The translations under genes were made by a program, and so were the position numbers. Positions 23,317 to 62,680 of a stretch of DNA of 64,000 bases are shown in pieces. Numbering within the stretch: the stretch's first letter is position 1; every line of letters begins with the position of its first letter. The notes beneath the pieces were generated by a model, which had not been told where the DNA came from, did not search any database, and worked only from the letters and a program-made list of their open reading frames with translations. The stretch covers positions 1-64,000 of IMG/VR virus record IMGVR_UViG_3300017917_001996. One strand, 5' to 3'.

Positions 23317-23328
23317 CCAGGATAACAT

Positions 23329-24435
23329 ATGTCTGTTAATTTTCCAGTAAACCCTCTAATGAATCAAGTCTATACAAACCTTGATAGGTCTTGGACGTGG
23401 AACGGACGGTTCTGGCAAGCTACTAGCACAACAGTTGGATACTCTGGTAGTCAAGGCAATATAGGTTACACAGGCAGCGAGGGTATCCAAGGCAATATAG
23501 GTTATACGGGCAGCGAGGGTATCCAAGGCAATATAGGTTATACGGGCAGTCAAGGTGTAGGTTACACTGGCAGTCGCGGTCCTATAGGATATACAGGTAG
23601 TGCAGTAGATACCAGCGGGTTTATTAAATATGATCCCGACGGCGACGGAATATGTGTATCCTACAGCGATCAGAACCCAACGATTAACGGCATATCATGT
23701 AACGGTGGTTGGATTTTTGGTGCCGATGGCAACTTTAATTCTGGTATGCTCGAAGCCAAGATTATTAATGCTAGAAATGGAAGTATTAACAGTTCTGGTG
23801 GTTATTACGTTGGAACTATAAATCCTTTAGAGGATCCCAATGCAGGAACCTACACTAGTAAACAAGTAATCTCTGCAGATGGATTGATAATGCCATCCGC
23901 TGGCAATGCTGCTACCAATGGAATTAAGTTTCCTAACGATCCTGGCACCGGAACCGGTGACACTGCTTGGATAAGATATTATGCTTTTTCCGGAGAGAAC
24001 ACTAATTTAGAAATTGGTATTTCTGACGACGGTGACGATAGCATTAATTTTGTTACCCCACGTGGTGTAGGAATTAACAGACAAAACCCGTCCGAAGCAT
24101 TGCATGTTACAGGAAATATCTTAGCTACTGGAACTATTAATTCTTCTAGCGATGCTAGACTAAAAACCAATGTAAGAACTATCGACAATCCCTTAAAGAT
24201 AGTTACTAATCTAAGAGGTGTGTTGTACACTACTTTGGACAATAGAGATGGTACCGGTGTTATTGCACAAGAAGTTGAGCAGGTTATGCCATGTCTTGTA
24301 AGCACCGATCGAGACGGAATGAAAAATGTCAGTTACGGAAACTTTGCTGGCATATTGATTGAAAGCATAAAAGAGCTTACTAGCCAAATCGAAGAGCTAC
24401 GGGCCGAAGTAAATCGACTAAAAGGTAATAGTTGA
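23329..24435 (+). CDS. Tail fibre with C-terminal intramolecular chaperone (peptidase S74)
   Basis: SSDARLKTNV...GVIAQEVE...coiled-coil end; GYTGS repeats. Confidence 0.85.
   Translation: MSVNFPVNPLMNQVYTNLDRSWTWNGRFWQATSTTVGYSGSQGNIGYTGSEGIQGNIGYTGSEGIQGNIGYTGSQGVGYTGSRGPIGYTGSAVDTSGFIKYDPDGDGICVSYSDQNPTINGISCNGGWIFGADGNFNSGMLEAKIINARNGSINSSGGYYVGTINPLEDPNAGTYTSKQVISADGLIMPSAGNAATNGIKFPNDPGTGTGDTAWIRYYAFSGENTNLEIGISDDGDDSINFVTPRGVGINRQNPSEALHVTGNILATGTINSSSDARLKTNVRTIDNPLKIVTNLRGVLYTTLDNRDGTGVIAQEVEQVMPCLVSTDRDGMKNVSYGNFAGILIESIKELTSQIEELRAEVNRLKGNS
23452..23549 (+). repeat. 36-bp in-frame tandem repeat, about 2.7 copies (QGNIGYTGSEGI)
   Basis: CAAGGCAATATAGGTTAYACRGGCAGCGAGGGTATC at 23452, 23488 and 23524. 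Confidence 0.9.
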
Positions 24436-26567: not shown

Positions 26568-27503
26568 ATGCTAATGAATCAACTTTGGGTTGAGAAGTAT
26601 CGACCAAGCACTGTTGACGGTTATGTGTTTACAGACGAACACGTACAAGAACAAGTTGAACACTGGATTAAAACAGGAACCGTTCCACATCTATTGCTGC
26701 ACGGACCTGCGGGCACAGGCAAGACCACACTAGCCAAGATTCTAATTAACAACCTAGGTGTTGATGAATCTGATGTTATGTTTGCTAACGGTAGTAAGGA
26801 AGGTCGTCGCATTGAATGGGTTGACCGGCTAATTGGCTTTTGTCAAACTATGCCGTTTGGTCCATTTAAGATTGTCTTAATTGATGAAGCAGACTATTTG
26901 AACAAAGAATCTGTGCAGCCAGCTATGCGTAACTTGATGGAAGAATACGCAGACAATGTTAGGTTTATCTTAACTTGTAACTATGTTAACAAGATCATTC
27001 CACCGCTGAAAAGTCGCTGTCACGAAATCCACATTTCTAAAACAAATCAAACAGAATTCACTGCACGAGCTGCTACAGTACTAGTCGAAGAAGGCATTGA
27101 ATTTGATTTGGACACCCTTGACAGTTATGTTAAAGCAACTTATCCAGATTTGCGTAAGTGCTTGAACTTGCTACAAACAAACAGCGTATCTGGCAAGCTA
27201 AACCAGCCAAGAGAAACTGGTGGTGTTGCTGGCGACTTTAAACTAGATGCCGTTAACTTGTTTAAGTCGGGTCGCTTCCGTCAAGCTCGCGAACTAATTT
27301 GCAATCAAGTTGATCCTGGAGAAATGGACGAAGTATATCGTTGGATGTACGACAATCTAGACTTATGGAGTTCAACGCAAGAAGGCCAAGACGAAGCAAT
27401 CATTATCATACGCCGCGGACTAGTTAATCATTCAATCTGTGCTGATGCAGAAATTAATCTCAGCGCCACAATAACAGAACTCATTTCACTCAATAAGGAA
27501 TAA
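26568..27503 (+). CDS. Clamp loader AAA+ subunit (RFC / T4 gp44-like)
   Basis: WVEKYRP, GPAGTGKT, LIDEAD, FILTCNY, SRC. Confidence 0.92.
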   Translation: MLMNQLWVEKYRPSTVDGYVFTDEHVQEQVEHWIKTGTVPHLLLHGPAGTGKTTLAKILINNLGVDESDVMFANGSKEGRRIEWVDRLIGFCQTMPFGPFKIVLIDEADYLNKESVQPAMRNLMEEYADNVRFILTCNYVNKIIPPLKSRCHEIHISKTNQTEFTARAATVLVEEGIEFDLDTLDSYVKATYPDLRKCLNLLQTNSVSGKLNQPRETGGVAGDFKLDAVNLFKSGRFRQARELICNQVDPGEMDEVYRWMYDNLDLWSSTQEGQDEAIIIIRRGLVNHSICADAEINLSATITELISLNKE

Positions 27504-28802: not shown

Positions 28803-28857
28803 TAGTACTGTTTATTAACCCAATCCCGCATTGTGTCGGGTAACGAAAGGAAGCAAA

Positions 28858-29913
28858 ATGGCAAAACGCCTCACACGTAAACTTACGGATGTAATTGCTG
28901 AAGTCATCACTCAGCTCAAAGCTCATTACGGTATCACGGATGAACAAATCAAGGCTTGGCAGAATCGTGTCAAAGCCGAAGGTTACGATTTTCCTGACAG
29001 TACTCAAGTTGACATCGACGATCTTTGGATCGACTACGAAGTACAGCGTGATGTAATTCACAAACACATTATCAATATTGCCAAGAAGTGGGATCCTCGA
29101 ATCTGTTCCCCTGGTTCAGCATGTCGTACTCCTGGCGGCAAACAAATCTTTCTCTATGATGCACAGCATAGAACTATTTCGGCTGGCATTCTTGGGTACA
29201 AGTCTATTCCTTGTGCAGTAGTCGAAACAACCGATCCTAATTTTGCAAGTTACGCATTTGAAATGCTTAACGACACAGGCGTTAAACGTCTAACCCCTGG
29301 TGACCTGCATCGTAATGCTCTAGTGCGTTTTAAAAACGGTAGCAAAGATAAAAAGGTTATTTCTGCTCGCACAATGCAAGACCAATTTGACAAGTTGGGT
29401 ATCGACTTGCAGGACAAAGGCAGTCGTAACAGCGACAACCTGCGTGGTGACAATGATTACTTCTTCAGTCACTTCAAGTATGCACAAAAGGGCATCGAAG
29501 TCGACGAAAGCGGAAAGATCTTGTACAACATTCTTGATGCTATCAAGTCAGCATTTCCTCTGCAAGAAGAAATCGATCAAGGTGTTTATATTGGCTTGTA
29601 CGAGTTGCACCGCATCTCTAAGACCAGTCCTAACATTAAATTGCCTGCGGACTGGATGAAGACTTTGCTAGACAGCGTTAAGCCTACATTTAAAAGTTCA
29701 GCGCTGGTACATGCCAAAGCTAAGATCCAATGGGAACATGTTAATCCGGGTGCTACCTGGAGTGCTCCTAGTGCAATGGCTAACTTCTTGCGTGAACTAC
29801 ATATTCGCAACAGCGGTAAACTTAACTTGCCTTATCACGGCGAAGGTAGTAAGATGGGAATTGAGTCTGGCAATATTGCTCCGGGTTTGTTCCCTGATGG
29901 GAGACAATCATGA
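28858..29913 (+). CDS. ParB/Srx-fold domain protein
   Basis: IDIDDLWIDYEVQR...LYDAQHRT...F..LN pattern of ParB-like (DGQHR) domains. Confidence 0.65.
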   Translation: MAKRLTRKLTDVIAEVITQLKAHYGITDEQIKAWQNRVKAEGYDFPDSTQVDIDDLWIDYEVQRDVIHKHIINIAKKWDPRICSPGSACRTPGGKQIFLYDAQHRTISAGILGYKSIPCAVVETTDPNFASYAFEMLNDTGVKRLTPGDLHRNALVRFKNGSKDKKVISARTMQDQFDKLGIDLQDKGSRNSDNLRGDNDYFFSHFKYAQKGIEVDESGKILYNILDAIKSAFPLQEEIDQGVYIGLYELHRISKTSPNIKLPADWMKTLLDSVKPTFKSSALVHAKAKIQWEHVNPGATWSAPSAMANFLRELHIRNSGKLNLPYHGEGSKMGIESGNIAPGLFPDGRQS

Positions 29914-30467
29914 ATAACTACTCAATTATTTCGATAACACCTTATCCTTGTTACAAAATCGAATTAAAAGATTTGAATAACCCAATTGATGTTAGTGCCA
30001 TATGCGCTAAACTAGGTGTAGAGGATTATGTCTACGAAGTCAAATTCGAGGATTGTATCCTAAAGTACGGACTCAGTTTTGGAACAAGTAAATCCATGTC
30101 ATGGACTCCCGGGGAGCGGATTTATCGACAATGTGGACATTTACCTGGTTGGAATAAACCTTTGCTAGGTCCAAGCGGTAGCGACATGCTAGAAATTACT
30201 CGTATGTACTTTAAAAAATCTGGTAAGCTAGTAGATCGTAATGGCGTAACTGTTACGATCCACGATCTAACAAATGTAAAAAGTCCAAGTATAGTTGAGC
30301 CATATCTTCATGTTAAACAATTAGAAAGTAAGTTAATTAACGACTACAAAAACAAATACGGTCAGACACCAATCGGAAATATCAAAGACGAATCCTACGT
30401 AGGTCGTATTAGATATACGCCAGATGAAGTTTTTAATTCATTATTTGAATTCGATGGAAACTCTTAA
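29910..30467 (+). CDS. Possible GIY-YIG-like nuclease
   Basis: YVYEV...LKYGLS...RIYRQ...LESKLI...PIGN. Confidence 0.45.
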   Translation: MNNYSIISITPYPCYKIELKDLNNPIDVSAICAKLGVEDYVYEVKFEDCILKYGLSFGTSKSMSWTPGERIYRQCGHLPGWNKPLLGPSGSDMLEITRMYFKKSGKLVDRNGVTVTIHDLTNVKSPSIVEPYLHVKQLESKLINDYKNKYGQTPIGNIKDESYVGRIRYTPDEVFNSLFEFDGNS

Positions 30468-31023
30468 AGAATCACTTGAACAGTTTGTAGCGCCTGTCTA
30501 CGGTAAAACCAAACGTACCAAGGACACTTACAAAACTGTAGCCAGCCATTGCAGTTTGCATATTACTCGTTTAGTCGACGAGTATCATGCGGTGCAAAAC
30601 GATCAACAGCTATTACGAGAAATTCGTGACGACATTGATTACTACCTGCGTCGTTATCACGAATACTGCATTAAGCAACGTGACGGAATGGGTGCTCATT
30701 ATTGGGAAATCGGTGCAGACGAGGACACTGATTTTGAACACCTAATTCCTGCGGCACGTATTCGTGATCTTCTACTTGCAAACACTATTACAGTAGAGCA
30801 AGCCCTTAATGCTCCTACAGTAAAGCTCAGTAGAACAAAACATGCCATGTTAAAAGAAGCAGGTTGGGCTAGCCATACTCCCGACATGTGGTTCCCATTC
30901 AAGCGTTACACACAGGTATTCACAGCACAATACCAAACACACGACGGAACTGCTATAGATCCAGACACCTGGACTCTAGAGCAACACTACGAGTATTTTA
31001 AACACTTGAAGATCGAAGCATGA
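30454..31023 (+). CDS. Hypothetical protein with a possible His-Me/HNH-like EHxIP motif
   Basis: DFEHLIP. Confidence 0.5.
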   Translation: METLKESLEQFVAPVYGKTKRTKDTYKTVASHCSLHITRLVDEYHAVQNDQQLLREIRDDIDYYLRRYHEYCIKQRDGMGAHYWEIGADEDTDFEHLIPAARIRDLLLANTITVEQALNAPTVKLSRTKHAMLKEAGWASHTPDMWFPFKRYTQVFTAQYQTHDGTAIDPDTWTLEQHYEYFKHLKIEA

Positions 31024-50386: not shown

Positions 50387-50673
50387 CTAATTTAATTAAA
50401 AATACATTTTCTTGGATTAAGGATGACTGGGCATCTCACCGTTTACGTTTTATTGTTGAGTTGCTTGCCTGGGGCATTAGTATCGGCTGTAGTATCACTA
50501 TGGCTCTCACGGTTCCTAATCCACCCCTACTTGCGCTTTATCCTATCTGGATCGCTGGGTGTGCTATGTATGCTTGGGCTGCTTGGACTAGGAAGTCTTT
50601 TGGCATGCTGGCTAACTACATCTTGCTCACCACCATCGACAGTATTGGGCTAATAAGGATGTTAATTAATTGA
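50383..50673 (+). CDS. Small multi-TM membrane protein
   Basis: Three hydrophobic segments. Confidence 0.65.
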   Translation: MTNLIKNTFSWIKDDWASHRLRFIVELLAWGISIGCSITMALTVPNPPLLALYPIWIAGCAMYAWAAWTRKSFGMLANYILLTTIDSIGLIRMLIN

Positions 50674-53327
50674 GTTACGTTGACGCATTATTTTCCAAAG
50701 ACGAAGACCGCATCTACGTAGTCGAACGTGTAGATGGAAAGAGACTCTACAAGGAGTTTCCGGCCAATTATATTTTTTATTACGATGATCCTCGCGGTAA
50801 ATTCCGTACTATTTACGACACACCAGTTAGTAGATTCAGTACTCGCAGTGGCAAGGAATTTTTTAAAGAACTAAAAATGCACCCAAAAAACAAAGTTTGG
50901 GAAAGTGACGTTAAGCCATTGGTGCGATGCCTAGAAGAAAACTATCTAGGCAAAGATGCCCCAAAGCTAAACGTAGCATTTTTCGATATTGAGGTCGACT
51001 TTGATCCTGTACGTGGATTTAGTCGACCTGAAGATCCTTTTAACCCTGTCACTGCTATCAGTATCTACCTCGATTGGTTAGATAAACTAATTACCTTGGT
51101 GATTGCACCTAAGAGTTATAGTCGAGAATCTGCACAGGAGATTGTTAATAAATTCGACGACTGTTATTTGTTTGATACAGAACAAGATATGATTAACACA
51201 TTCTTGGAACTGATCGACGATGCAGATATCTTAAGCGGTTGGAACTCAGAAGGTTTCGATATTCCGTATATGGTTATGCGGACCACACAGATTCTAAGTA
51301 AAGACGACACACGTCGTTATTGTTTGTGGAATCAATTTCCTAAGAAGCGCACATTCGAACGATTCGGTGCAGAGAACATTACATTCGACCTAATCGGTCG
51401 TGTGCACATGGACTATATGCAACTGTATCGCAAGTACACTTATGAAGAACGTCACAGCTATAGTCTAGACGCCATTGGCGAATATGAACTAGACGAACGC
51501 AAGACGCAGTATGAAGGTACACTAGATCAGCTATACAACAAAGACTTTCCTAAGTTTATTGAATATAACAGACAGGATACTTTGCTGTTAGCCAAGCTAG
51601 ATAAGAAGTTAAGATTCATTGACCTAGCCAACGAACTGGCACATGATAACACTGTGCTGTTGCCCACTGTTATGGGTGCTGTGGCTGTTACCGAGCAGGC
51701 AATTATCAATGAAGCGCATCAAAGAGGTTTAGTTGTTCAAAATAGGAGTAGTTCAGATGACCAAGACACGCAAGCGGCAGGTGCCTACGTTGCTTATCCC
51801 AAAAGAGGCATGCACGAATACATCGGAGCAATTGACATCAACTCGCTCTATCCCTCGGCTATTCGTGCCCTTAACATGGCACCAGAAACAATCGTCGGAC
51901 AACTCAGACCAACGCTCACTGACCACTACATAAATGAAAAGATGGCCAATGGCTCCAGCTTTGCTGATGCCTGGGAAAACATGTTTGGCAGTTTAGAATA
52001 TACTGCTGTTATGAACATGGAGCCAGGCACCGAATTAACTGTAGACTGGGAAGGCGGTGGGTCAGATACAATGAGTGCCAAAGACATTTGGCATTTAATC
52101 TTTGAAGGGAACCAACCTTGGATTCTTAGTGCCAATGGTACTATTTTTAAATATGATGCTAAAGGTGTAGTACCAGGATTATTGGAGCGTTGGTATGCAG
52201 AACGTAAAGAACTTCAGGCTAAAAAGAAAGATGCTACAACTGCTGAAGAAAAGGCCTTTTGGGACAAGCGACAGTTGGTTAAGAAAATTAACCTTAATTC
52301 ACTGTATGGCGCTATTCTTAATCCTGGATGTCGTTTTTTTGATAAGCGTATTGGTCAAAGTACAACCTTAACAGGTCGTGTTATTGCACGTCATATGGAT
52401 GCATTTGTTAATGAATGCATTACAGGCGTTTATGATCACGTTGGTGAAGCTGTTATCTATGGCGACACTGACTCTGTTTATTTCAGTGCATGGCCTGCTG
52501 TTAAAGATGATGTCGAAGCTGGGCGTATGCCTTGGAACAAAGACATTTGCGTACAACTTTACGATCAGATTGCTGAACAGGTAAACGATAGCTTTCCTGC
52601 GTTTATGGAACGTGCATTTCGTTGTCCAAGACCAATGGGCAGTCTTATCAAAGGTGGTCGTGAATTGGTTGCAGAGAAAGGCCTGTTCATTAAGAAAAAG
52701 CGTTATGCTGTATTGATTTACGATCTAGAAGGTAATCGTCTAGACAAAGATGGCAAGCCAGGCAAGGTCAAGGCTATGGGTCTAGATCTTAAAAGGAGTG
52801 ATACACCTAAGGTTGTGCAAGACTTCTTAAGTGACTTGCTCTTAAAGGTACTCACTGGTTCGCCCAAAGAAGTTGTCTATGAGCAGGTTAAAGAATTTAA
52901 GATCTTATTCCAAGATCGACCTGCTTGGGAGAAAGGCACACCTAAGCGTGTTAACAATTTGACTAAGTTTAGTGAAGCCGAAGCGAGGCAAGGTCGTGCT
53001 AACATGCCAGGTCATGTTCGAGCAGCTATCAATTGGAATACATTGAAGCGTATGCACAGTGACAACTATAGCATGGCTATTGTAGACGGTATGAAAACGG
53101 TTGTGTGTAAACTCAAGCCTAATCCACTAGGCTTTACCAGCGTGGGTTATCCTACAGACGAAACACACATACCAGACTGGTTCAAGGAATTGCCATTCGA
53201 CGACGGCTTAATGGAAACAACTATTGTAGACCAGAAAGTCGAAAACCTATTAGGTGTGCTAGACTGGAATATCAGCGAGCACACTGAAACTAAAAACACA
53301 TTCAATGACTTGTTTAGCTTTGATTAA
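50670..53327 (+). CDS. Family B DNA polymerase (T4 gp43-like)
   Basis: Exonuclease FDIEV and WNSEGFD; polymerase DINSLYPS, KINLNSLYG, YGDTDS, KKRY. Confidence 0.97.
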   Translation: MSYVDALFSKDEDRIYVVERVDGKRLYKEFPANYIFYYDDPRGKFRTIYDTPVSRFSTRSGKEFFKELKMHPKNKVWESDVKPLVRCLEENYLGKDAPKLNVAFFDIEVDFDPVRGFSRPEDPFNPVTAISIYLDWLDKLITLVIAPKSYSRESAQEIVNKFDDCYLFDTEQDMINTFLELIDDADILSGWNSEGFDIPYMVMRTTQILSKDDTRRYCLWNQFPKKRTFERFGAENITFDLIGRVHMDYMQLYRKYTYEERHSYSLDAIGEYELDERKTQYEGTLDQLYNKDFPKFIEYNRQDTLLLAKLDKKLRFIDLANELAHDNTVLLPTVMGAVAVTEQAIINEAHQRGLVVQNRSSSDDQDTQAAGAYVAYPKRGMHEYIGAIDINSLYPSAIRALNMAPETIVGQLRPTLTDHYINEKMANGSSFADAWENMFGSLEYTAVMNMEPGTELTVDWEGGGSDTMSAKDIWHLIFEGNQPWILSANGTIFKYDAKGVVPGLLERWYAERKELQAKKKDATTAEEKAFWDKRQLVKKINLNSLYGAILNPGCRFFDKRIGQSTTLTGRVIARHMDAFVNECITGVYDHVGEAVIYGDTDSVYFSAWPAVKDDVEAGRMPWNKDICVQLYDQIAEQVNDSFPAFMERAFRCPRPMGSLIKGGRELVAEKGLFIKKKRYAVLIYDLEGNRLDKDGKPGKVKAMGLDLKRSDTPKVVQDFLSDLLLKVLTGSPKEVVYEQVKEFKILFQDRPAWEKGTPKRVNNLTKFSEAEARQGRANMPGHVRAAINWNTLKRMHSDNYSMAIVDGMKTVVCKLKPNPLGFTSVGYPTDETHIPDWFKELPFDDGLMETTIVDQKVENLLGVLDWNISEHTETKNTFNDLFSFD

Positions 53328-53341
53328 TTTTACCATTGGCA

Positions 53342-53370
53342 TTGAAAAATCTAAATAATTCAAGTATTAT
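53342..53370 (+). promoter_or_regulatory. Sigma70-like promoter with nested CTAAATA
   Basis: TTGAAA-N17-TATTAT; CTAAATA at 53351. Confidence 0.6.
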
Positions 53371-53393
53371 ATCAACAACTATAAAGGAAACCT

Positions 53394-54128
53394 ATGAAAG
53401 ACCATCTTATGGACATCGTTCAACACACCCATGCACTAGGTGTGATTGATCTTATTAAAATCTCTGGAACTGCACAAGAAACTTCTATTAACGCAGTGGC
53501 TGAAGACCGTACTGTAGTGCTAGACGCTACCTTCCACGGTCCTGTTGCTGAGTTTATTGGTACATTTGGTATGCCCAACCTAGGCAAGCTAAACACCATT
53601 TTGAATATTCCCGAGTACAAGGAAGATGCAGTATTTACTATTACCCGCCAAAAGGACGACGCCGGTGATATGGTTCCTGCAGGTATCCATTTTGAAAACA
53701 AGGTCGGCGACTTTAAGAACGACTACCGTTTCATGGCAGCTAAGATTGTCAACGACAAAGTTAAGAACGTAAAGTTCAAAGGCGTTAAGTGGGGTGTAGA
53801 GTTTGAACCTACTGCGTTGGGTATTCAGCGTTTTGCTTTCCAAAGTCAAGCCAACAGTGAAGAAAGTACTTTTATTGCCAAGACTGAAGGGTCGGATCTA
53901 AAGTTCTTCTTTGGTGATACTAGCAGTCATGCAGGTAACTTTGTGTTTGCCAGCAACATCAGTGGTTCGGTTACCAAAGGTTGGTTGTGGCCAGTTGCAG
54001 TAGTTAAGAGCATTCTTAGCCTGCCTGGAGACAAGGTCATGCGTTTTAGTGACGAAGGTGCTGCACAGATTACTGTCGACAGTGGTATTGCAGTTTATAA
54101 CTATACATTACCTGCACAGCAGAAATGA
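53394..54128 (+). CDS. Probable DNA sliding clamp (gp45/PCNA-like)
   Basis: 244-aa beta-rich protein directly after the polymerase, ending YNYTLPA; a clamp loader is present in the window. Confidence 0.6.
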   Translation: MKDHLMDIVQHTHALGVIDLIKISGTAQETSINAVAEDRTVVLDATFHGPVAEFIGTFGMPNLGKLNTILNIPEYKEDAVFTITRQKDDAGDMVPAGIHFENKVGDFKNDYRFMAAKIVNDKVKNVKFKGVKWGVEFEPTALGIQRFAFQSQANSEESTFIAKTEGSDLKFFFGDTSSHAGNFVFASNISGSVTKGWLWPVAVVKSILSLPGDKVMRFSDEGAAQITVDSGIAVYNYTLPAQQK

Positions 54129-54466
54129 TTAAACATATAGTAGCAGGACCCGGTGTTAGTGTAACCGGGTCCTTTAGTACTCCATATATTAGTCCAGGCT
54201 CGCAGAGCGCTGGTATGATAAGGTACAATACTAGCTCACAGAACACAGAAGTCTACGACGGTAACAGTTGGCTCACAATGAGTTCTAATCCTAGCATTTC
54301 CTTAAGCAACGACACCATGGAAGTTTTAGACTGGGCAAGAAAAAAGATGCAGGAAGAAAAGCAGCTCGAAGACTTAATGAACCAGCACCCTGGGCTTCGA
54401 GACCTACACGAAAAGTTTGAACTAATGCGGGCATTATGCCAGACAGACAAAGAGAATGCAAGATAA
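54125..54466 (+). CDS. Hypothetical protein
   Basis: Translationally coupled ORF. Confidence 0.65.
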   Translation: MIKHIVAGPGVSVTGSFSTPYISPGSQSAGMIRYNTSSQNTEVYDGNSWLTMSSNPSISLSNDTMEVLDWARKKMQEEKQLEDLMNQHPGLRDLHEKFELMRALCQTDKENAR

Positions 54467-56015
54467 TTTAACTAGCAAACAAAACGATTACGCTGTATTT
54501 CTTCCGGCTATCAGCGGATTCTATGCTACCTTTATAGGCAAGCAACGCAACGAACAGTATGTAGATCCTGCACGATTTCCGCAGGGTCTGACAGATATGG
54601 AACAACTCAATTGGTTGAACAGTTCCAAAGGTTTGTTTACATATCGTTGGAGTCTATATTCAGGTGGTCATGCTAACTTGGATCTCGCTAAACAAGATTG
54701 GAGCGAGGATATGGTGCGTAACCGTGAGCCAGGTACATTTATCCTAGGCGACTCTGGTGGATTCCAGATTGCCAAAGGTCTGTGGGAAGGTGACTGGAAA
54801 GCTAACAGTGGTTGCCCTCGGGCGCAAAAGAAGCGAGAGCTTATTCTAAACTGGTTAGACAATGTTGCTGACTACGGAATGATCCTTGATATTCCTACCT
54901 GGGTTATTCACGATAAGAAAGCCAGTAAGGCTTGCCAAATTACTACACTGCAAGAAGCTGTAGATGCCACTAAGTTTAACAACGAGTACTTTATGAAACA
55001 CCGTAAGGGTGTAAAGAATGGTGGTGCTCGTTTCTTAAATGTGTTGCAAGGTGACAATCATACCAGTGCTGAAGAATGGTATCAGACCATGAAGCACTAT
55101 TGCGATCCTAACCTGTATCCAGACACACATTTTGATGGTTGGGCCATGGGCGGTCAGAACATGTGTGATGTACACTTGGTTCTCAAGCGTCTAGTGGCCT
55201 TGCGCTATGACAACTTGTTACAAGAAGGAAAACATGATTGGATGCACTTCTTAGGCACAAGTAAACTAGAGTGGGCAGTTCTATTAACTGTTATTCAACG
55301 AGCTGTAAGAAAATATGTCAACCCGAATTTTACTATTAGTTTTGATTGTGCAAGCCCTTTCTTGGCCACAGCTAATGGCCAAGTCTACCACCACATCGAC
55401 TTACCACATCAAGAAAAGTGGTGCTATAGAATGAGTCCTAGCGTTGACGATAAAAAATACGCCACTGACACACGAAAGTATAGTGACGTAATTGTTAACG
55501 ACGGCTATGTTAAGCACTTTGATGAAAGTCCTATTAGTCAACTGCTCAAGGTCAAAGATATTTGTATCTACAAGCCCGGAGATCTAAATAAGATTGGTAA
55601 AGAAGGTAAGACTTCCTGGGATAGTTTCAGTTATGCACTGTTAATGGGTCATAATGTTTGGACACACATCGAAGCTGTGCAACGTGCTAACAGAGAGTTT
55701 GACGCAGGTACGTGGCCTTACATGATGCAACACGATGGCAGCGATCACGAATTCTTTGCTGACATTGTAGATCGTATTTTTGCTGCGCCAACTCGTGAAG
55801 CTGCCATGGAGATCATTGATAGTCCTAAGTATGCGCGACACAATGGTTATTGGAATCAAATCATTGGCACACGAGGATTTAAAGGTAAGAACACAGTTAA
55901 TGCCAATACTATGTTTAATAACTTGTTTGAAATCTCAGATGGCAACGACGAGGACAGCGTTGACTTTAGCGAAGATGTTTTAGATAACCTAGAGCAAGAA
56001 CAAAAGGAACAATAA
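54456..56015 (+). CDS. TGT-fold 7-deazaguanine DNA transglycosylase (DpdA-like)
   Basis: LGDSGGFQ, MILDIP, VLQG, MHFLG, SFDCAS; clustered with QueD-like and folE genes. Confidence 0.8.
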   Translation: MQDNLTSKQNDYAVFLPAISGFYATFIGKQRNEQYVDPARFPQGLTDMEQLNWLNSSKGLFTYRWSLYSGGHANLDLAKQDWSEDMVRNREPGTFILGDSGGFQIAKGLWEGDWKANSGCPRAQKKRELILNWLDNVADYGMILDIPTWVIHDKKASKACQITTLQEAVDATKFNNEYFMKHRKGVKNGGARFLNVLQGDNHTSAEEWYQTMKHYCDPNLYPDTHFDGWAMGGQNMCDVHLVLKRLVALRYDNLLQEGKHDWMHFLGTSKLEWAVLLTVIQRAVRKYVNPNFTISFDCASPFLATANGQVYHHIDLPHQEKWCYRMSPSVDDKKYATDTRKYSDVIVNDGYVKHFDESPISQLLKVKDICIYKPGDLNKIGKEGKTSWDSFSYALLMGHNVWTHIEAVQRANREFDAGTWPYMMQHDGSDHEFFADIVDRIFAAPTREAAMEIIDSPKYARHNGYWNQIIGTRGFKGKNTVNANTMFNNLFEISDGNDEDSVDFSEDVLDNLEQEQKEQ

Positions 56016-56521
56016 TGGATAGAGATCCAATTAACGGTGAAAAGTTTTTCACTGGCATAGAAGTTGAACATACTCCAGCATACGGAAAGCAAACTCTGTT
56101 TGTTGTTGGTGTTCAACCAGTGGAACAAATTGCAAAGAATTTGCAAGGGTGCGAACACATCTATTTTGGTGCCAACATGAGTTTTCCTAAATTAGGTGTC
56201 AACGACGGTGGTGCATGGAGAGAGTGGGAACAGATGATTATTCCTTTCCTTAAAAAAGATTATCTGTGCACCCTAGATGTCGATATTACTTGTGTCGAAG
56301 GCCTAGTCGAAGGCGGCTTGCCCGAATATTATAATTTTATTCCGATGATTTCGGCTAAGTTACCTTACATTGGTCTACTAGGTTATAACGCTACTCTAAA
56401 ACTAGACGACAAAGGTTTCCAGGCATCCAATCCGGGTGTTTGGTGCCATAGCATTCATAGTCTGCAGGACCGACAAGTATTTACCCCGTGGAATTGTTAC
56501 GAAGAAGATAAAGGTGTATGA
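56015..56521 (+). CDS. Hypothetical protein of the modification cluster
   Basis: TAATG-coupled to the DpdA-like gene; GIEVEHTP, HIYFGANMSF. Confidence 0.65.
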   Translation: MDRDPINGEKFFTGIEVEHTPAYGKQTLFVVGVQPVEQIAKNLQGCEHIYFGANMSFPKLGVNDGGAWREWEQMIIPFLKKDYLCTLDVDITCVEGLVEGGLPEYYNFIPMISAKLPYIGLLGYNATLKLDDKGFQASNPGVWCHSIHSLQDRQVFTPWNCYEEDKGV

Positions 56522-57099
56522 TGTCTATCAAAGTTAAAAAAATCAAAACCAAACTTATCGGCCAGACTTTGCCGTTTTCCGACAACTCGAAAAATGCAAG
56601 ATACTGCGAAAGGTTTCTTATTAACGAAGGTTGGAGTATCGACCAAAATGCTAAAGGTCCAGATGTAAAAAAAGATAACCTTGTGCTCGAATTTAAGTTA
56701 AAAGATATCGAAAGTGAATCTGCGTTTACAATTGGTAAAATTACTTTTGACGCTCTTAAAAATATAAGTTACAATAAATCACACATAAAAGAAAAACTTC
56801 AACAACTTTGTATTATCGAGCACAAGGATAAGGTCGTGTTAAATGCCAACGTCTACGACTTGTCTGATTCATTTATACAAGGTTTACTCGAAGAGGCATT
56901 TGACGAAGCAAGAGAACTTATCGTTGACGGTTACGCATCAAACTATATTCCTGGAAATAGATTCGGGTATTTTGAAAGGACTGACAAGCATCCAAACATT
57001 TATGCATTCCGAATTAGAAAAAATATTATGAACACTACAATCAAGGCAATGTCTAGATCTTCTGACAACTTTAACAAACATTTCGAAATAGTAGATTAA
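56518..57099 (+). CDS. PD-(D/E)xK restriction-endonuclease-like protein
   Basis: E...GPDV...LEFKLK catalytic pattern. Confidence 0.55.
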   Translation: MMSIKVKKIKTKLIGQTLPFSDNSKNARYCERFLINEGWSIDQNAKGPDVKKDNLVLEFKLKDIESESAFTIGKITFDALKNISYNKSHIKEKLQQLCIIEHKDKVVLNANVYDLSDSFIQGLLEEAFDEARELIVDGYASNYIPGNRFGYFERTDKHPNIYAFRIRKNIMNTTIKAMSRSSDNFNKHFEIVD

Positions 57100-57833: not shown

Positions 57834-57881
57834 TATAAAATCCTTCTTGTAATATAAATACATTATGCGGAGGATTTTATA
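57834..57881 (+). promoter_or_regulatory. RBS-sequestering hairpin with a late promoter TATAAATA at its loop
   Basis: TATAAAATCCT/AGGATTTTATA stem covers GGAGG and the A of ATG; TATAAATA at 57853-57860. Confidence 0.8.
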
Positions 57882-58615
57882 TGGGTAAACGAACACATGG
57901 AAAAAATACTGAAATAGTTCTTGCAGAAATAAAAAAAATACACGGCGAAAAATTTCTTTACGACAAATTTCAGTATGTAAATTGCAAAACTAAAGTTAGT
58001 GTTGGTTGCAAAGTTCACGGTTATTTCGAAAAATACCCTAACGATTTGAAAAGAATCAATGGAGGTTGCCCTCGTTGCAACAATAGTTTTTTTAAAACAG
58101 ATAATGAATTTAAAGTTGAACTACTGAATAAATTTCCGAATTATATGTATGATGGAACATATAAAAATGCTAAAACAAAATTATTTTTTACATGTTTGGA
58201 ACATCAACATAGTTTTAGTTCAACACCAAATTCTATATTACTCGGACATACAGGATGCATAGATTGTTATGCAAACAAACAAATACAAACTAGAGTACTC
58301 AAAGGACAAATGACCGACCCATTATTAAAATCAGACTATGAAAATTATAGACGTGCTGTATGGAAATTTTCAAATAGGTCATTCAAAAAATATATGACTG
58401 GACAAAAAAGAGATAGACAAAATCACTTAGACCATATACTATCGATAGTAGATGGGTATAATAATAAAGTTCCTGCAGAGATTGTTGGAAGCATTCATAA
58501 CCTAAGAATTATAAGTGGTACATCCAATAGAAATAAGAGTTATAAAAGCTATATATCGGTAGAAGAATTGCTTGAAAGGTTTAATAATGAGAAAATTATT
58601 GTACATGGGGCTTGA
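57881..58615 (+). mobile_element. Zn-finger/HNH homing endonuclease
   Basis: CKVHG...CPRC, CLEH...CIDC, HLDHILS...NLRII...NRNK. Confidence 0.8.
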
Positions 58616-61323: not shown

Positions 61324-61389
61324 ATACCATTGCTACACAAAGGTAGCAAACTTTTTAAAATTAACATCCGTGTAAGGAAGGATACAAAT

Positions 61390-62073
61390 ATGTCGTATAA
61401 CAAAACAAAAACCGACCCAGTATTGGGTAAAGCAGTACATGAGCATTTGGTAAAATGTGGTGTAGAAACTCCTACAGTTCCTAACGACATTGATCGTAAA
61501 GACAAGATTGAGCAGATCGAAAGTCACTTTACAGAAATCATGAAGATAATGGGCCTGGATCTCAACGACGACAGTTTAATCGAAACACCCAAGCGTGTGG
61601 CAAAAATGTATGTCAATGAAATCTTTTGGGGGTTGGACTACGAAGCATTTCCAAAATGCACAGCAGTAGAAAACAAAATGAAGTACGATGAAATGGTCAT
61701 TGAACGCAACGTCAATGTTCAGAGTAACTGTGAACATCACTTTGTTGTAATTGATGGACTAGCAACTGTGGCCTATATTCCTAATCAAAAGGTTTTAGGT
61801 CTTAGCAAAATCAATCGTGTAGTGGAATACTTCTCTAAGCGTCCGCAGATTCAAGAACGATTAACTGAACAGATCTATCACGCACTACAATACATTCTTG
61901 GCACAGACAATATCGCTGTAGTTGTCGATGCTCAACACTATTGTGTGAAAAGTCGAGGTGTTGAAGATGTCGGATCAAGTACAGTCACCAGCAAGTTAGG
62001 TGGTGTATTTAAATCCGATCCTGCTGTGCGTAACGAGTTTATGAACATTGTTAATGCTTGTAAAACAAAATAA
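61390..62073 (+). CDS. folE: GTP cyclohydrolase I
   Basis: ETPKRVAKMY, SNCEHH, GLSKINR, RPQIQERLT, HYCVKSRG. Confidence 0.95.
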   Translation: MSYNKTKTDPVLGKAVHEHLVKCGVETPTVPNDIDRKDKIEQIESHFTEIMKIMGLDLNDDSLIETPKRVAKMYVNEIFWGLDYEAFPKCTAVENKMKYDEMVIERNVNVQSNCEHHFVVIDGLATVAYIPNQKVLGLSKINRVVEYFSKRPQIQERLTEQIYHALQYILGTDNIAVVVDAQHYCVKSRGVEDVGSSTVTSKLGGVFKSDPAVRNEFMNIVNACKTK

Positions 62074-62074
62074 G

Positions 62075-62680
62075 TTATCTACCTAAAAACTTATAATCGT
62101 ATCTCTTTTTAAGTAGATACGGTGTAGTGTTAAAATGTCGTGATGCGGCTCCTATAGTAGGAAAGGTTATGCCTTCGACTACTATAGGGCGAACATTAGG
62201 ATTGTTATTATTTTGACTCATCCTTTTTCGCTGTGCTGGATCTTTCATTGGATTGTTTTCTACCATGCGTTTACGAACTTGTTCAATAATTTCTGGTGTA
62301 GAAAAAATGTTATCTTTCCCTCTTTTGTAAGATCCTCGGGCTTTACGAGTAGCAGACATCTTAACATACGATTCCGGAGTGCAGTATATTTGTGGGGTTG
62401 GACACTTGGAAGTATCATACTTGGCATTAAACAATTTATAGGCATACATCATTCTGTATCGGTTTGCACCCTTAACCATTTCAATTAACAGTCTATGACA
62501 TACTCTGTGTTCTTTGTAGGTAAGCACCACAAGATTACTCGGATCATCTGTGCCGCCAAATGACCGTGGAATGATGTGATGCGTTTGAAATCCATCATTT
62601 CGTTCTTTAAGGTGATTACGCTGAATAGAACGATTGATTATTCTATAATAAACCTTGGTGTATTTGTTATCTAAAAACAT
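62075..62680 (-). mobile_element. HNH homing endonuclease
   Basis: HHIIPRSFGGTDDPSNLVVLTYKEHRVCH; C-terminal DNA-binding-like repeats. Confidence 0.85.

What the first reader, a model, noticed from the sequence alone, without database searches (positions are those of the whole stretch)
53290..57099. A shared C-terminal FNxLFx[FI] peptide links the polymerase, the DpdA-like enzyme and two nucleases (candidate clamp-binding motif)
Seen: the polymerase ends NTFNDLFSFD. The DpdA-like protein has TMFNNLFEIS before an acidic tail. The restriction-like protein ends DNFNKHFEIVD, and the distant GIY-YIG-like protein (29910-30467) ends EVFNSLFEFDGNS. Known: T4 and RB69 polymerases bind the gp45 clamp through a hydrophobic C-terminal peptide. 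Inference: base exchange and the nucleases ride the sliding clamp (53394-54128), coupling DNA modification and self/non-self cutting to replication.
Basis: partly seen in the sequence, partly recalled or inferred. Interest (0 to 1): 0.7.

Follow-up and report, generated by a model that had tools for sequence, protein, structure and literature searches.

The report
Shared clamp-docking tail on polymerase and DpdA-like enzyme
In this jumbo phage the DNA polymerase, a DNA base-swapping enzyme of the tRNA-guanine transglycosylase (TGT) fold and two small nucleases end in the same short peptide, which most likely docks them onto the phage's own ring-shaped sliding clamp, so that DNA modification would be tied to replication.

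Summary
FN.[LH]F.[FI] occurs four times in all ORFs of the 250-kb genome, each at the C-terminus of a named protein, against 0.007 expected there.

ORF 53394-54128 has no sequence-family hit, but its model (pLDDT 96) matches only PCNA-type sliding clamps. A gp44/RFC-like clamp loader lies at 26568-27503. The polymerase is T4/RB69-type, and its tail resembles the T4 gp43 and gp55 clamp-binding tails.

The 519-aa protein has a TGT fold (Foldseek E 2.6e-8) and a disordered tail carrying the motif. The motif is kept in about 60 orthologues and relocated to the extreme C-terminus in six.

Across six lineages the polymerase tail and the enzyme's motif change together. These include the cultured Pseudomonas phage PA5oct and Vibrio phage 2.275.O. 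Only 2 of 720 pairings reach the observed match.

A complex model places the motif in the canonical PIP pocket (ipSAE 0.63; best control 0.02; mark reached by 58 of 80 solved complexes and 2 of 110 mismatched pairs).

The nucleases are strain-specific accessory genes: a MutH-like PD-ExK protein and a possibly GIY-YIG protein. Their roles, including "self/non-self cutting", are untested. Binding is predicted, not measured.

Verdict: a new variant of the known clamp tool-belt principle, applied to 7-deazaguanine-type DNA modification.

The parts
50670..53327 (+). Family B replicative DNA polymerase of the T4/RB69 type, 885 aa
   Evidence: Pfam DNA_pol_B 3.4e-35 and DNA_pol_B_exo1 1.2e-21. phrog_262 1.9e-193. 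The best PDB sequence hits are RB69 gp43 chains, E about 3e-63.
53301..53321 (+). Polymerase C-terminal motif FNDLFSF (residues 878-884, followed by D and the stop)
   Evidence: Conserved as TF[DN]xLF[ST][FW][DE]$ in about 80 relatives. Resembles the T4 gp43 tail ..SLDFLFG$.
53394..54128 (+). PCNA-like sliding clamp, 244 aa (phrog_12062, 'unknown function')
   Evidence: AF2 pLDDT 96, pTM 0.91. Foldseek against PDB gave at least 500 hits at E <= 0.001; all 50 listed are PCNA or sliding-clamp chains, E 1.5e-10 to 6e-9, TM 0.54-0.72. No Pfam, NCBIfam or PDB sequence hit.
54456..56015 (+). TGT-fold, DpdA-like candidate DNA transglycosylase, 519 aa, with a disordered tail from residue 475
   Evidence: AF2 pLDDT 87, tail 475-519 mostly below 50. 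All top Foldseek PDB hits are tRNA-guanine transglycosylases, E 2.6e-8. Atlas features point to viral TGT/DpdA clusters. D99 (DSGGFQ) and D297 (FDC) are invariant in 39 orthologues.
55914..55934 (+). DpdA-like motif FNNLFEI (residues 487-493), followed by an acidic tail to residue 519
   Evidence: Conserved in orthologues. Modelled contacts: residues 479-495 with clamp 38-42, 124-131, 198-200, 221-223 and 238-244.
56518..57099 (+). ORF193, a PD-(D/E)xK nuclease candidate (MutH/MvaI-BcnI-like); single-gene strain-specific insertion
   Evidence: D49, E58 and K60 are invariant in 7 homologues. Atlas structure TM 0.62-0.67 to MutH-family clusters. A homologue gives Pfam MutH E 0.0023, below the cut-off. 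Absent from G001 and G002; its flanking genes are adjacent in G002.
57070..57090 (+). ORF193 C-terminal motif FNKHFEI (residues 185-191)
   Evidence: Conserved as [FY]xx[LH]F (NF[NK][KR][LH]F in the five closest homologues; YRNLF and YTTLF in the two distant ones) at the C-terminus of 7 homologues of 33-66% identity.
29910..30467 (+). ORF185, an orphan protein, possibly GIY-YIG/Eco29kI-like; part of a strain-specific three-gene island, 28831-31023
   Evidence: No sequence homologue found. Atlas leads to GIY-YIG/Eco29kI: feature score 0.93, structure TM 0.46-0.49. The island is absent from G001 and G002.
30432..30452 (+). ORF185 C-terminal motif FNSLFEF (residues 175-181)
   Evidence: It lies outside the part of the protein that aligns structurally (residues 1-163).
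26568..27503 (+). Clamp-loader large subunit (RFC/gp44-like AAA+), 311 aa
   Evidence: Pfam AAA 1.5e-16, DNA_pol3_delta2 2.9e-10, Gp44_lid 9.5e-4 (below that family's cut-off).
61330..62073 (+). GTP cyclohydrolase I (FolE), the first step of 7-deazaguanine synthesis
   Evidence: Pfam GTP_cyclohydroI 1.1e-62.

Best explanation
The shared peptide (consensus [FY]-[ND]-x-[LF]-F-x-[FWIV], at or near the C-terminus and flanked by acidic residues) is most likely the docking motif for the phage's own PCNA-like sliding clamp (53394-54128).

Proposed mechanism:
- The RFC/gp44-like loader (26568-27503) puts the trimeric ring on primed DNA.
- The T4-type polymerase holds on through its C-terminal tail, which sits in the hydrophobic pocket under the interdomain connector loop.
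- The remaining pockets, or clamps left behind on finished DNA, recruit the TGT-fold DpdA-like enzyme through the same motif in its 45-residue disordered tail.
- That enzyme would then exchange guanine for a 7-deazaguanine derivative on freshly replicated duplex, while tethered to and sliding along the DNA.
- Strain-specific nucleases (ORF193 and ORF185 here, an HNH enzyme in a relative) have picked up the same motif and are probably recruited to clamp-marked DNA as well, for purposes unknown.

Shown by computation: the motif, its rarity, its conservation and its co-variation; the clamp and TGT folds; the loader; the gene context. Inferred: actual binding, the enzyme's DNA base-exchange activity, co-replicative timing, and any role of the nucleases.
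For: 1. Rarity and position: four of four genome-wide matches are C-terminal, against 0.007 expected.

2. The receptor exists. 53394-54128 folds as a PCNA-type clamp (pLDDT 96; Foldseek E about 1e-10 to PCNAs). It lies directly after the polymerase gene, and a clamp loader is present.

3. The polymerase is RB69/T4-like. T4 gp43 ends SLDFLFG$ and gp55 ends SLDFLYEAND$. These are the documented, interchangeable, hydrophobic and acidic gp45-binding tails (PMC2988020; PMC6212786).

4. Conservation:
- polymerase tail TF[DN]xLF[ST][FW][DE]$ in about 80 loci;
- DpdA-like M[FY]NxLF plus acidic tail in most of the roughly 65 orthologues, with one or two substitutions in some;
- in six orthologues that lost the internal motif, a new [IL]LNP[DE]LF[EG][EV]$-type motif appears at the extreme C-terminus;
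- the ORF193 family keeps [FY]xx[LH]F at its C-terminus.

5. Co-variation within genomes (polymerase tail / DpdA-like motif):
- L129: SYNALFG$ / SYNALFGE;
- L125: FSKFFKW / FNKFFKV;
- PA5oct: HFDSLFGW$ / SFNSLFDV;
- Vibrio phage 2.275.O: NNTDLFDW$ / NNNDLFGW$.
Mean within-genome identity is 5.0 of 8 positions against 2.8 across genomes. Only 2 of 720 pairings reach the observed sum.

6. Complex model: clamp trimer plus three peptides, with the DpdA-like peptide scored. ipSAE 0.63 (runs 0.58-0.63); best of 3 controls 0.02. The mark was reached by 58 of 80 solved complexes and 2 of 110 mismatched pairs. The runs agree in at least 91% of contacts and the partner's pLDDT is at least 50. F487, L490 and F491 contact clamp 38-42, 124-131 (connector loop), 221-223 and 238-244 (C-terminus).

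7. The motif sits in a disordered tail (pLDDT below 50 at 475-506).

8. In two near-complete relatives, only the polymerase and the DpdA-like protein carry a convincing motif; a few short, basic-context regex matches were set aside.

9. Precedent: T4 alpha-glucosyltransferase binds gp45 (PMC13216743, citing Sommer 2004).
Against: - No binding was measured. The complex tool warns that pairs resembling solved PCNA-peptide complexes can pass from memory, that peptides under 30 residues were outside its calibration, and that my own alignment was used.
- Only the DpdA-like peptide was scored. The polymerase and ORF193 peptides were present in the model but not evaluated, and ORF185 was not modelled.
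- The predicted clamp contact residues are not more conserved than the rest of the protein (mean entropy 2.62 against 2.36).
- The motif does not fit the canonical PIP box (Qxx[ILM]xxFF) or the bacterial QL[SD]LF consensus.
- No Pfam, NCBIfam or PDB sequence model recognises either the clamp or the TGT-like enzyme. Both assignments rest on predicted structure and gene context.
- DNA transglycosylase activity, and the modified base itself, are unverified for this phage.
Confidence: 0.75

Rival explanations
1. The motif is a docking peptide for a different shared partner, such as the host beta clamp, the phage single-strand-binding protein or the clamp loader, rather than for the phage PCNA-like clamp.
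For: The core xxLF resembles the bacterial beta-clamp motif QL(S/D)LF (PMC9690074). The relocated variant LNPDLF[EG]E$ and the Phosso tail ..EGLF$, in a phage with a DnaE-like polymerase, look even more beta-clamp-like. Conservation and co-variation show that there is a common receptor, but not which one.
Against: The polymerase is T4/RB69-type, and such tails are documented to bind the phage's own clamp (PMC2988020). The clamp gene is always next to the polymerase gene and close to the TGT-like gene: in the window, L125, L129, PA5oct and Vibrio phage 2.275.O. The motif variants change in the lineages where the clamp has diverged to 29-34% identity. In the complex model, replacing the clamp with an unrelated protein dropped the score to 0.02.
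Confidence: 0.12
2. The resemblance has no common function. The polymerase tail is a clamp tail, while the others are structural C-terminal elements or chance matches.
For: The pattern was defined post hoc. ORF185 has no homologue, so its motif cannot be tested for conservation. The ORF193 motif lies at the edge of the region that aligns with MutH-like folds. Looser matches elsewhere appear to belong to folded domains: a MazG-like protein and an RNaseH/FEN-like exonuclease.
Against: 0.007 matches expected against 4 observed. The DpdA-like motif lies in a disordered tail. It is conserved, it is relocated when lost, and it co-varies with the polymerase tail across six lineages.
Confidence: 0.06
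3. The motif on the accessory nucleases serves selfish mobility, not host or self discrimination. They are free-standing homing endonucleases that use the clamp to reach replicating genomes of co-infecting relatives.
For: ORF193 is a single-gene insertion between genes that are adjacent in G002, and ORF185 lies in a three-gene island absent from relatives. An HNH endonuclease in L038 ends TTFNSIFNFQ$. GIY-YIG and HNH are the classes of T4 Seg and Mob homing endonucleases (T4 annotation; PMC2988022).
Against: No target sites, no evidence of mobility and no cleavage data. PD-(D/E)xK MutH-like enzymes are not typical phage homing endonucleases. This rival concerns only the role of the nucleases and is compatible with clamp binding.
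Confidence: 0.3

Closest known systems
T4/RB69 gp45 clamp 'tool-belt': the shared hydrophobic and acidic C-terminal tails of gp43, gp55 and gp33, and the LDFLF loop of T4 ligase
   Same: A T4-type family B polymerase with a C-terminal hydrophobic tail. The same short motif is reused on non-polymerase proteins and is followed by acidic residues (T4 gp43 SLDFLFG$, gp55 SLDFLYEAND$; PMC2988020, PMC6212786). The clamp is a trimer-type two-domain protein with an RFC-like loader.
   Different: The clamp has no detectable sequence similarity to gp45 or PCNA families, and its best structural matches are cellular PCNAs. The clients here are a TGT-fold DNA-modifying enzyme and nucleases, not transcription factors. 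No gp33- or gp55-like carrier of the motif was found in three genomes.
T4 alpha-glucosyltransferase binding to gp45 (Sommer et al. 2004; re-tested in PMC13216743)
   Same: A phage DNA-hypermodification enzyme that binds the phage sliding clamp. This led to the proposal that modification is concomitant with replication.
   Different: Different enzyme class and chemistry: glucosylation of hmC against base exchange of G. I found no report of a polymerase-like tail motif on alpha-GT, and its C-terminus (..FKEQFDIITK$) does not resemble gp43's. In T4 the clamp interaction turned out not to be the main determinant of modification level (PMC13216743).
DpdA family DNA guanine transglycosylases (bDpdA, DpdA1-4) of 7-deazaguanine DNA modification
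   Same: A TGT fold. The motifs DSGGFQ and FDC are conserved in the orthologue alignment; from my own knowledge of TGT enzymes they match the catalytic-Asp motifs. The neighbourhood holds FolE here, QueE in PA5oct and QueF/QueC/amidotransferase/FolE in Vibrio phage 2.275.O. PA5oct DNA resists G-containing restriction sites (PMC12191111).
   Different: Not recognised by Pfam TGT/DpdA or by NCBIfam. tblastn finds it only in PA5oct-like, Vibrio 2.275.O and Phosso phages, where it is annotated as hypothetical. It is larger (519 aa) and has a clamp-motif tail. No clamp link has been reported for any DpdA: two papers mention both terms, only in passing.
Eukaryotic DNMT1-PCNA, and MutL/MutS-clamp coupling (my own knowledge)
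   Same: DNA-modifying or strand-discriminating enzymes are recruited to newly replicated DNA by a short clamp-binding motif.
   Different: Unrelated enzymes, and the canonical PIP or beta motifs rather than this one. The comparison is analogy only.

Membership tests
Sliding clamp (DNA-clamp fold, PCNA/gp45 type) | Two tandem DNA-clamp domains in a monomer of about 230-260 aa | tested here: met
   AF2 pLDDT 96, with the strand and helix pattern repeated twice. Foldseek against PDB: at least 500 hits at E <= 0.001; all 50 listed are PCNA or clamp chains, E 1.5e-10 to 6e-9, TM 0.54-0.72.
Sliding clamp (DNA-clamp fold, PCNA/gp45 type) | Sequence membership in a curated clamp family (Pfam DNA_PPF, gp45-slide_C or PCNA) | tested here: not met
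   No Pfam or NCBIfam hit. PF02916 was not found anywhere in the genome. A profile search against PDB found nothing relevant. This is the clamp fold in a new sequence family (phrog_12062, 'unknown function').
Sliding clamp (DNA-clamp fold, PCNA/gp45 type) | A cognate AAA+ clamp loader and adjacency to the replicative polymerase gene | tested here: met
   An RFC/gp44-like ORF lies at 26568-27503. The clamp gene starts 67 bp after the polymerase stop. The same order is found in L125, L129, L133, PA5oct and Vibrio phage 2.275.O.
Sliding clamp (DNA-clamp fold, PCNA/gp45 type) | Closed trimeric ring that encircles DNA and confers processivity | not testable with these tools
   Three copies were modelled, but ring geometry was not reported. 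This needs a solved structure or a processivity assay.
Clamp-binding short linear motif (T4 gp43-type tail / PIP-like) | A short hydrophobic motif at a terminus or in a disordered segment, shared with the replicative polymerase tail | tested here: met
   The DpdA-like tail is disordered. The ORF185 motif lies outside the aligned fold.
Clamp-binding short linear motif (T4 gp43-type tail / PIP-like) | Conserved in orthologues and co-evolving with the receptor or with other clients | tested here: met
   Permutation: 2 of 720 pairings. Not testable for ORF185, which has no homologue.
Clamp-binding short linear motif (T4 gp43-type tail / PIP-like) | Fits the canonical consensus (PIP Qxx[ILM]xxFF, or bacterial QL[SD]LF) | tested here: not met
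   FNxLFx[FI] has no Q and different spacing (consensus sequences from PMC9690074). It is closest to the T4 tail SLDFLFG.
Clamp-binding short linear motif (T4 gp43-type tail / PIP-like) | Physically binds the hydrophobic pocket under the interdomain connector loop | tested here: inconclusive
   Model only. ipSAE 0.63; best of 3 controls 0.02. The mark was reached by 58 of 80 solved complexes and 2 of 110 mismatched pairs. Run agreement is at least 91% and partner pLDDT at least 50. Contacts are with clamp 38-42, 124-131, 221-223 and 238-244. The tool states that this supports binding but does not show it.
DpdA / TGT-superfamily DNA transglycosylase | TGT TIM-barrel fold | tested here: met
   AF2 pLDDT 87. 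All top Foldseek PDB hits are tRNA-guanine transglycosylases, E 2.6e-8, target-normalised TM about 0.5. Atlas points to viral TGT/DpdA clusters.
DpdA / TGT-superfamily DNA transglycosylase | Matches the curated family HMMs (Pfam PF01702 TGT, PF23859 DpdA) | tested here: not met
   No hit at E <= 0.01 in Pfam or E <= 1 in NCBIfam. A profile search against PDB sequences found none.
DpdA / TGT-superfamily DNA transglycosylase | Encoded with 7-deazaguanine precursor genes | tested here: met
   FolE at 61330-62073. QueE lies near the PA5oct homologue, and QueF, QueC, an amidotransferase and FolE lie near the Vibrio phage homologue. FolE or GCHY-1 is present in L125 and L129.
DpdA / TGT-superfamily DNA transglycosylase | Exchanges guanine in DNA for a 7-deazaguanine base | not testable with these tools
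   Needs LC-MS of virion DNA and an enzyme assay. Indirect support: PA5oct DNA resists G-containing restriction sites (PMC12191111).
PD-(D/E)xK nuclease, MutH/MvaI-BcnI-like (ORF193) | A catalytic D...(D/E)xK triad on a restriction-endonuclease-like fold | tested here: inconclusive
   D49, E58 and K60 are invariant in 7 homologues. Atlas structure TM 0.62-0.67 to MutH-family clusters. A homologue scores Pfam MutH E 0.0023, below the cut-off. No hit for ORF193 itself.
GIY-YIG nuclease (ORF185) | The GIY-YIG fold with its catalytic Tyr, Arg and Glu | tested here: inconclusive
   Only Atlas leads: feature score 0.93 to GIY-YIG/Eco29kI clusters, structure TM 0.46-0.49. No HMM hit and no homologues.

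The most novel reading that the evidence does not exclude
A previously unclassified, clamp-tethered subfamily of DpdA-like DNA transglycosylases works as part of the replisome in a broad clade of jumbo phages, including PA5oct-like Pseudomonas phages and Vibrio phage 2.275.O. By riding a divergent PCNA-like clamp, the enzyme would scan nascent duplex processively. This would explain how a 'post-replicative' base-exchange enzyme could reach high or complete guanine replacement, and why such enzymes might fail when expressed alone in E. coli. The same clamp would be a hub onto which mobile nucleases repeatedly graft the motif.
Probability: 0.4. Interest if true: 0.8.

Novelty: new variant of a known kind. 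Interest (0 to 1): 0.68.

Why it matters
Phage 7-deazaguanine DNA modification is held to be post-replicative, carried out by DpdA transglycosylases. Modification levels range from below 0.1% to 100% of G, with no known mechanistic reason, and the efficient subfamilies could not be reconstituted in E. coli (PMC10516641).

A conserved polymerase-type clamp-docking tail on a TGT-fold enzyme gives a concrete, testable hypothesis. Tethering to the sliding clamp would supply processivity and would place the enzyme on new DNA before host nucleases see it.

The work also:
- assigns a function to a very abundant 'unknown' phage protein family, phrog_12062, with more than 7800 database relatives, annotated as a 'structural protein' in PA5oct;
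- names a candidate for the transglycosylase that the study reporting G-modified DNA in PA5oct (PMC12191111) does not name;
- shows that short docking motifs can be used to read out a phage clamp's client list from sequence alone.

Because PA5oct and Vibrio phage 2.275.O are cultured, the tests are feasible now.

Tried and rejected
- Sequence-family searches for the clamp, the TGT-like enzyme, ORF193 and ORF185 gave nothing above threshold: Pfam, PHROGs and NCBIfam, and PDB by sequence and by profile. The assignments therefore had to come from predicted structure.
- The 99 C-terminal residues of the polymerase searched against PDB gave only noise.
- megablast of the locus against GenBank phages found no match.
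- A search for further motif carriers with looser patterns in the 250-kb genome and two near-complete relatives found only membrane-protein or basic-context matches, which I rejected. It also found a MazG-like protein and an RNaseH/FEN-like exonuclease whose matches appear to be part of folded domains; these are not counted.
- Radical-SAM proteins in L030 and L064 end in W[RK][NE]LF[PK]W in a basic context; I judged these doubtful.
- I tested whether the clamp's contact residues are unusually conserved. They are not.
- I considered recent duplication of a DNA segment as the source of the shared peptide. Codon comparison rejects it.
- I considered DpdA3 membership. tblastn at E <= 1 does not reach Cellulophaga or Campylobacter phages, so the subfamily is left unassigned.

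Full report
**Origin and setting.** The window is the first 64 kb of a 250,289-bp IMG/VR virus record, estimated 71% complete. Its relatives are uncultured jumbo phages of 320-350 kb.

**1. The observation**

I scanned all 1195 ORFs of at least 40 aa in the whole genome for the strict pattern FN.[LH]F.[FI]. It occurs four times only. These are the four named proteins, and each match lies within 26 residues of the C-terminus.

In 300 per-protein shuffles of a 250-gene set, the pattern occurred 0.07 times per proteome and 0.007 times near a C-terminus. The pattern was defined after the fact, so I gave more weight to tests that do not depend on it.

The four motif-coding stretches use different codons and have unrelated flanks. 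The similarity is therefore at the peptide level, not a copied piece of DNA.

**2. What the parts are**

*Polymerase (50670-53327).* It is a family B enzyme (Pfam; phrog_262). Its closest solved relatives are RB69 and T4 gp43, at E about 3e-63.

*ORF 53394-54128.* It has no Pfam, NCBIfam or PDB sequence match, even with a 120-sequence profile. It belongs to phrog_12062, 'unknown function'.
- An AlphaFold2 model built on that alignment is very confident: pLDDT 96, pTM 0.91.
- Foldseek against the PDB returns at least 500 hits. All 50 listed are PCNA or sliding-clamp chains, at E about 1e-10 and TM 0.54-0.72.
- A clamp-loader large subunit (AAA plus DNA_pol3_delta2, with a sub-threshold Gp44_lid match) lies at 26568-27503.
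By sequence it is a new family.

*The 519-aa protein (54456-56015).* It too is invisible to HMM libraries.
- Its model (pLDDT 87) matches only tRNA-guanine transglycosylases in the PDB, at E 2.6e-8.
- Atlas features point to viral TGT/DpdA clusters.
- The motifs DSGGFQ (D99) and FDC (D297) are invariant in 39 orthologues. From my own knowledge of TGT enzymes, these correspond to the catalytic aspartates.
- Residues 475-519, which carry the motif, are mostly modelled as disordered.
- FolE lies nearby, at 61330-62073.

*ORF193.* It has an invariant D49...E58-x-K60 triad. Its structural neighbours are MutH/MvaI-BcnI-like, at TM 0.62-0.67, and a homologue gives a sub-threshold MutH hit.

*ORF185.* It has no homologue, and only weak GIY-YIG/Eco29kI leads.

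**3. Conservation**

I examined 80 related viral loci.
- The polymerase ends TF[DN]xLF[ST][FW][DE]$ almost without exception.
- The DpdA-like orthologues mostly keep M[FY]NxLF at the same place, followed by a variable acidic tail.
- Six orthologues have lost that site (..NKHLEIEG..). These have instead a basic linker and a new [IL]LNP[DE]LF[EG][EV]$-type motif at the extreme C-terminus. This relocation argues for selection on having such a peptide.
- The seven ORF193 homologues, at 33-66% identity, all end in [FY]xx[LH]F.

In two near-complete relatives (338 and 321 kb), only the polymerase and the DpdA-like enzyme carry a convincing motif. ORF193 is a single-gene insertion. ORF185 lies in a three-gene island that these relatives lack. 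An HNH endonuclease in another relative ends TTFNSIFNFQ$.

The conserved pair is therefore polymerase plus DpdA-like enzyme. The nucleases are accessory genes that acquired the motif.

**4. Co-variation**

I followed distant clamp homologues (29-37% identity) and tblastn hits of the TGT-like protein in cultured phages. The gene order polymerase, clamp, TGT-like gene recurs in L125, L129, PA5oct and Vibrio phage 2.275.O. The two motifs change together:

| Lineage | Polymerase tail | DpdA-like motif |
|---|---|---|
| Window | TFNDLFSF | MFNNLFEI |
| Close relatives | TFDSLFSW | MFNSLFDQ |
| L129 | SYNALFG$ | SYNALFGE |
| L125 | VFSKFFKW | NFNKFFKV |
| Pseudomonas phage PA5oct | HFDSLFGW$ | SFNSLFDV |
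| Vibrio phage 2.275.O | NNTDLFDW$ | NNNDLFGW$ |

Within-genome identity averages 5.0 of 8 positions, against 2.8 between genomes. Only 2 of the 720 possible pairings reach the observed total. Two peptides on unrelated proteins that track each other are best explained by a shared receptor.

T4's own tails, read from NC_000866, are gp43 ..SLDFLFG$ and gp55 ..SLDFLYEAND$. The L129 polymerase tail aligns with gp43's residue for residue. The T4 tails are the documented, interchangeable, hydrophobic and acidic gp45-binding epitopes (PMC2988020; PMC6212786).

**5. Complex model**

The model held three copies of the clamp plus the polymerase, ORF193 and DpdA-like peptides, with the DpdA-like peptide as the scored partner.
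- ipSAE was 0.63 (runs 0.58-0.63), and the best of three controls was 0.02.
- The mark was reached by 58 of 80 solved complexes and 2 of 110 mismatched pairs.
- The runs agree in at least 91% of contacts, and the partner's pLDDT is at least 50.
- F487, L490 and F491 sit against clamp residues 38-42, 124-131 (interdomain connector), 221-223 and the C-terminal 238-244. From my own knowledge of PCNA, this is the canonical PIP-box site.
- The tool cautions that this supports binding but does not show it, that likeness to solved complexes can be recalled from memory, and that such short peptides were outside its calibration.
- The contact residues are not more conserved than average.

**6. Mechanism and comparison with what is known**

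The most likely reading is a T4-style clamp tool-belt. The loader places the ring on DNA. The polymerase holds on by its tail. The DpdA-like transglycosylase uses the same motif on a flexible tail to work on clamp-marked, newly made duplex.

The principle is known:
- T4 gp43, gp33, gp55 and ligase all bind gp45.
- T4 alpha-glucosyltransferase binds gp45 (PMC13216743).
- DNMT1 binds PCNA (my own knowledge).

What I found no report of is the link to a TGT-fold base-exchange enzyme. Only two papers mention both DpdA and 'sliding clamp', each in passing.

The link bears on an open point. DpdA-type modification is considered post-replicative. Its efficiency ranges from below 0.1% to 100% of G, and the efficient subfamilies could not be reconstituted in E. 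coli (PMC10516641).

PA5oct DNA resists G-containing restriction sites, and the phage encodes QueE and QueD, but that study names no transglycosylase (PMC12191111). EST35_0316, the homologue found here, is the obvious candidate. EST35_0314, annotated 'structural protein', is the clamp.

**7. What is not supported**

- Nothing tests 'self/non-self cutting'.
- The nucleases could equally be homing endonucleases or host-DNA nucleases.
- Binding, enzymatic activity and the nature of the modified base remain to be measured.

**Verdict**

The clamp-motif interpretation is well supported for the polymerase and the DpdA-like enzyme. It is plausible for ORF193, and untestable by conservation for ORF185. 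This is a new variant of a known kind of system.

Noticed in passing
window 28831-31023: A three-gene island absent from both near-complete relatives, whose flanking genes are adjacent in G001. It holds ORF360 (a weak ParB/Srx-like signal: NCBIfam SerK E 0.035, and a DAQHR stretch), ORF185 (the motif carrier) and ORF199. It may be a strain-specific nuclease or defence module.
   Followed up: partly
L017, L022, L036, L038, L050, L051 (DpdA-like orthologues, coordinates): Six orthologues have replaced the internal FNxLF with ..NKH[LF]E[IL]EG.., which resembles the ORF193 tail FNKHFEIVD. They have gained a basic linker and a new [IL]LNP[DE]LF[EG][EV]$-type motif at the extreme C-terminus.
   Followed up: partly
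L135 7921-8667 (PA5oct EST35_0314): The PA5oct homologue of the clamp (phrog_12062, E 4.5e-40) is annotated 'structural protein', with ESI-MS/MS detection in virions. Either the clamp is packaged or it is a contaminant of the particle preparation.
   Followed up: no
L041, L059, L063; L135 2614-7840: In several relatives and in PA5oct the polymerase gene is split or interrupted by an intein or Hef-like homing endonuclease insertion near residue 600. The window's gene is uninterrupted.
   Followed up: no
L131 2978-4475: A distant relative has two tandem clamp paralogues, and its polymerase tail (..NTDIFYDNDD$) has no clear motif.
   Followed up: no
G000 67269-67673 and 69491-70483 (L138 1269-1673, 3491-4483): A MazG-like NTP pyrophosphohydrolase keeps WS[NK]I[FY] near its C-terminus in three genomes. 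An RNaseH/FEN-like exonuclease ends NFAEIFSASYKA (orthologues AIGDILSASYPK and NYVDFLSKAYPE). Both may be degenerate clamp motifs or simply parts of folded domains.
   Followed up: partly
window 62075-62680 (-) and 57881-58615 (+): An HNH endonuclease sits just after FolE, and there is a 244-aa protein with a treble-clef-like zinc-finger signal. Both are strain-specific, being absent from G001 and G002, and neither carries the motif.
   Followed up: partly
L137 8989-10638 (Sinorhizobium phage Phosso): The TGT-like homologue of this 469-kb phage ends ..KIVEGLF$. The phage encodes a DnaE-like polymerase rather than a family B one, so the enzyme may be tuned to a different, beta-type clamp.
   Followed up: no
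L030 13627-14784; L064 8525-9787: Radical-SAM proteins (possibly QueE-like) in relatives end in W[RK][NE]LF[PK]W or FESIFNY in a basic context. It is unclear whether these are clamp motifs.
   Followed up: no
window 21121-24435: Two large proteins have long collagen-like GYTGS/GATGP repeat runs. They are probably tail fibres.
   Followed up: no
window 30424-30467: The listed start of ORF199 overlaps the motif-coding end of ORF185 by 44 nt. An in-frame ATG at 30454 would reduce the overlap to 14 nt.
   Followed up: no
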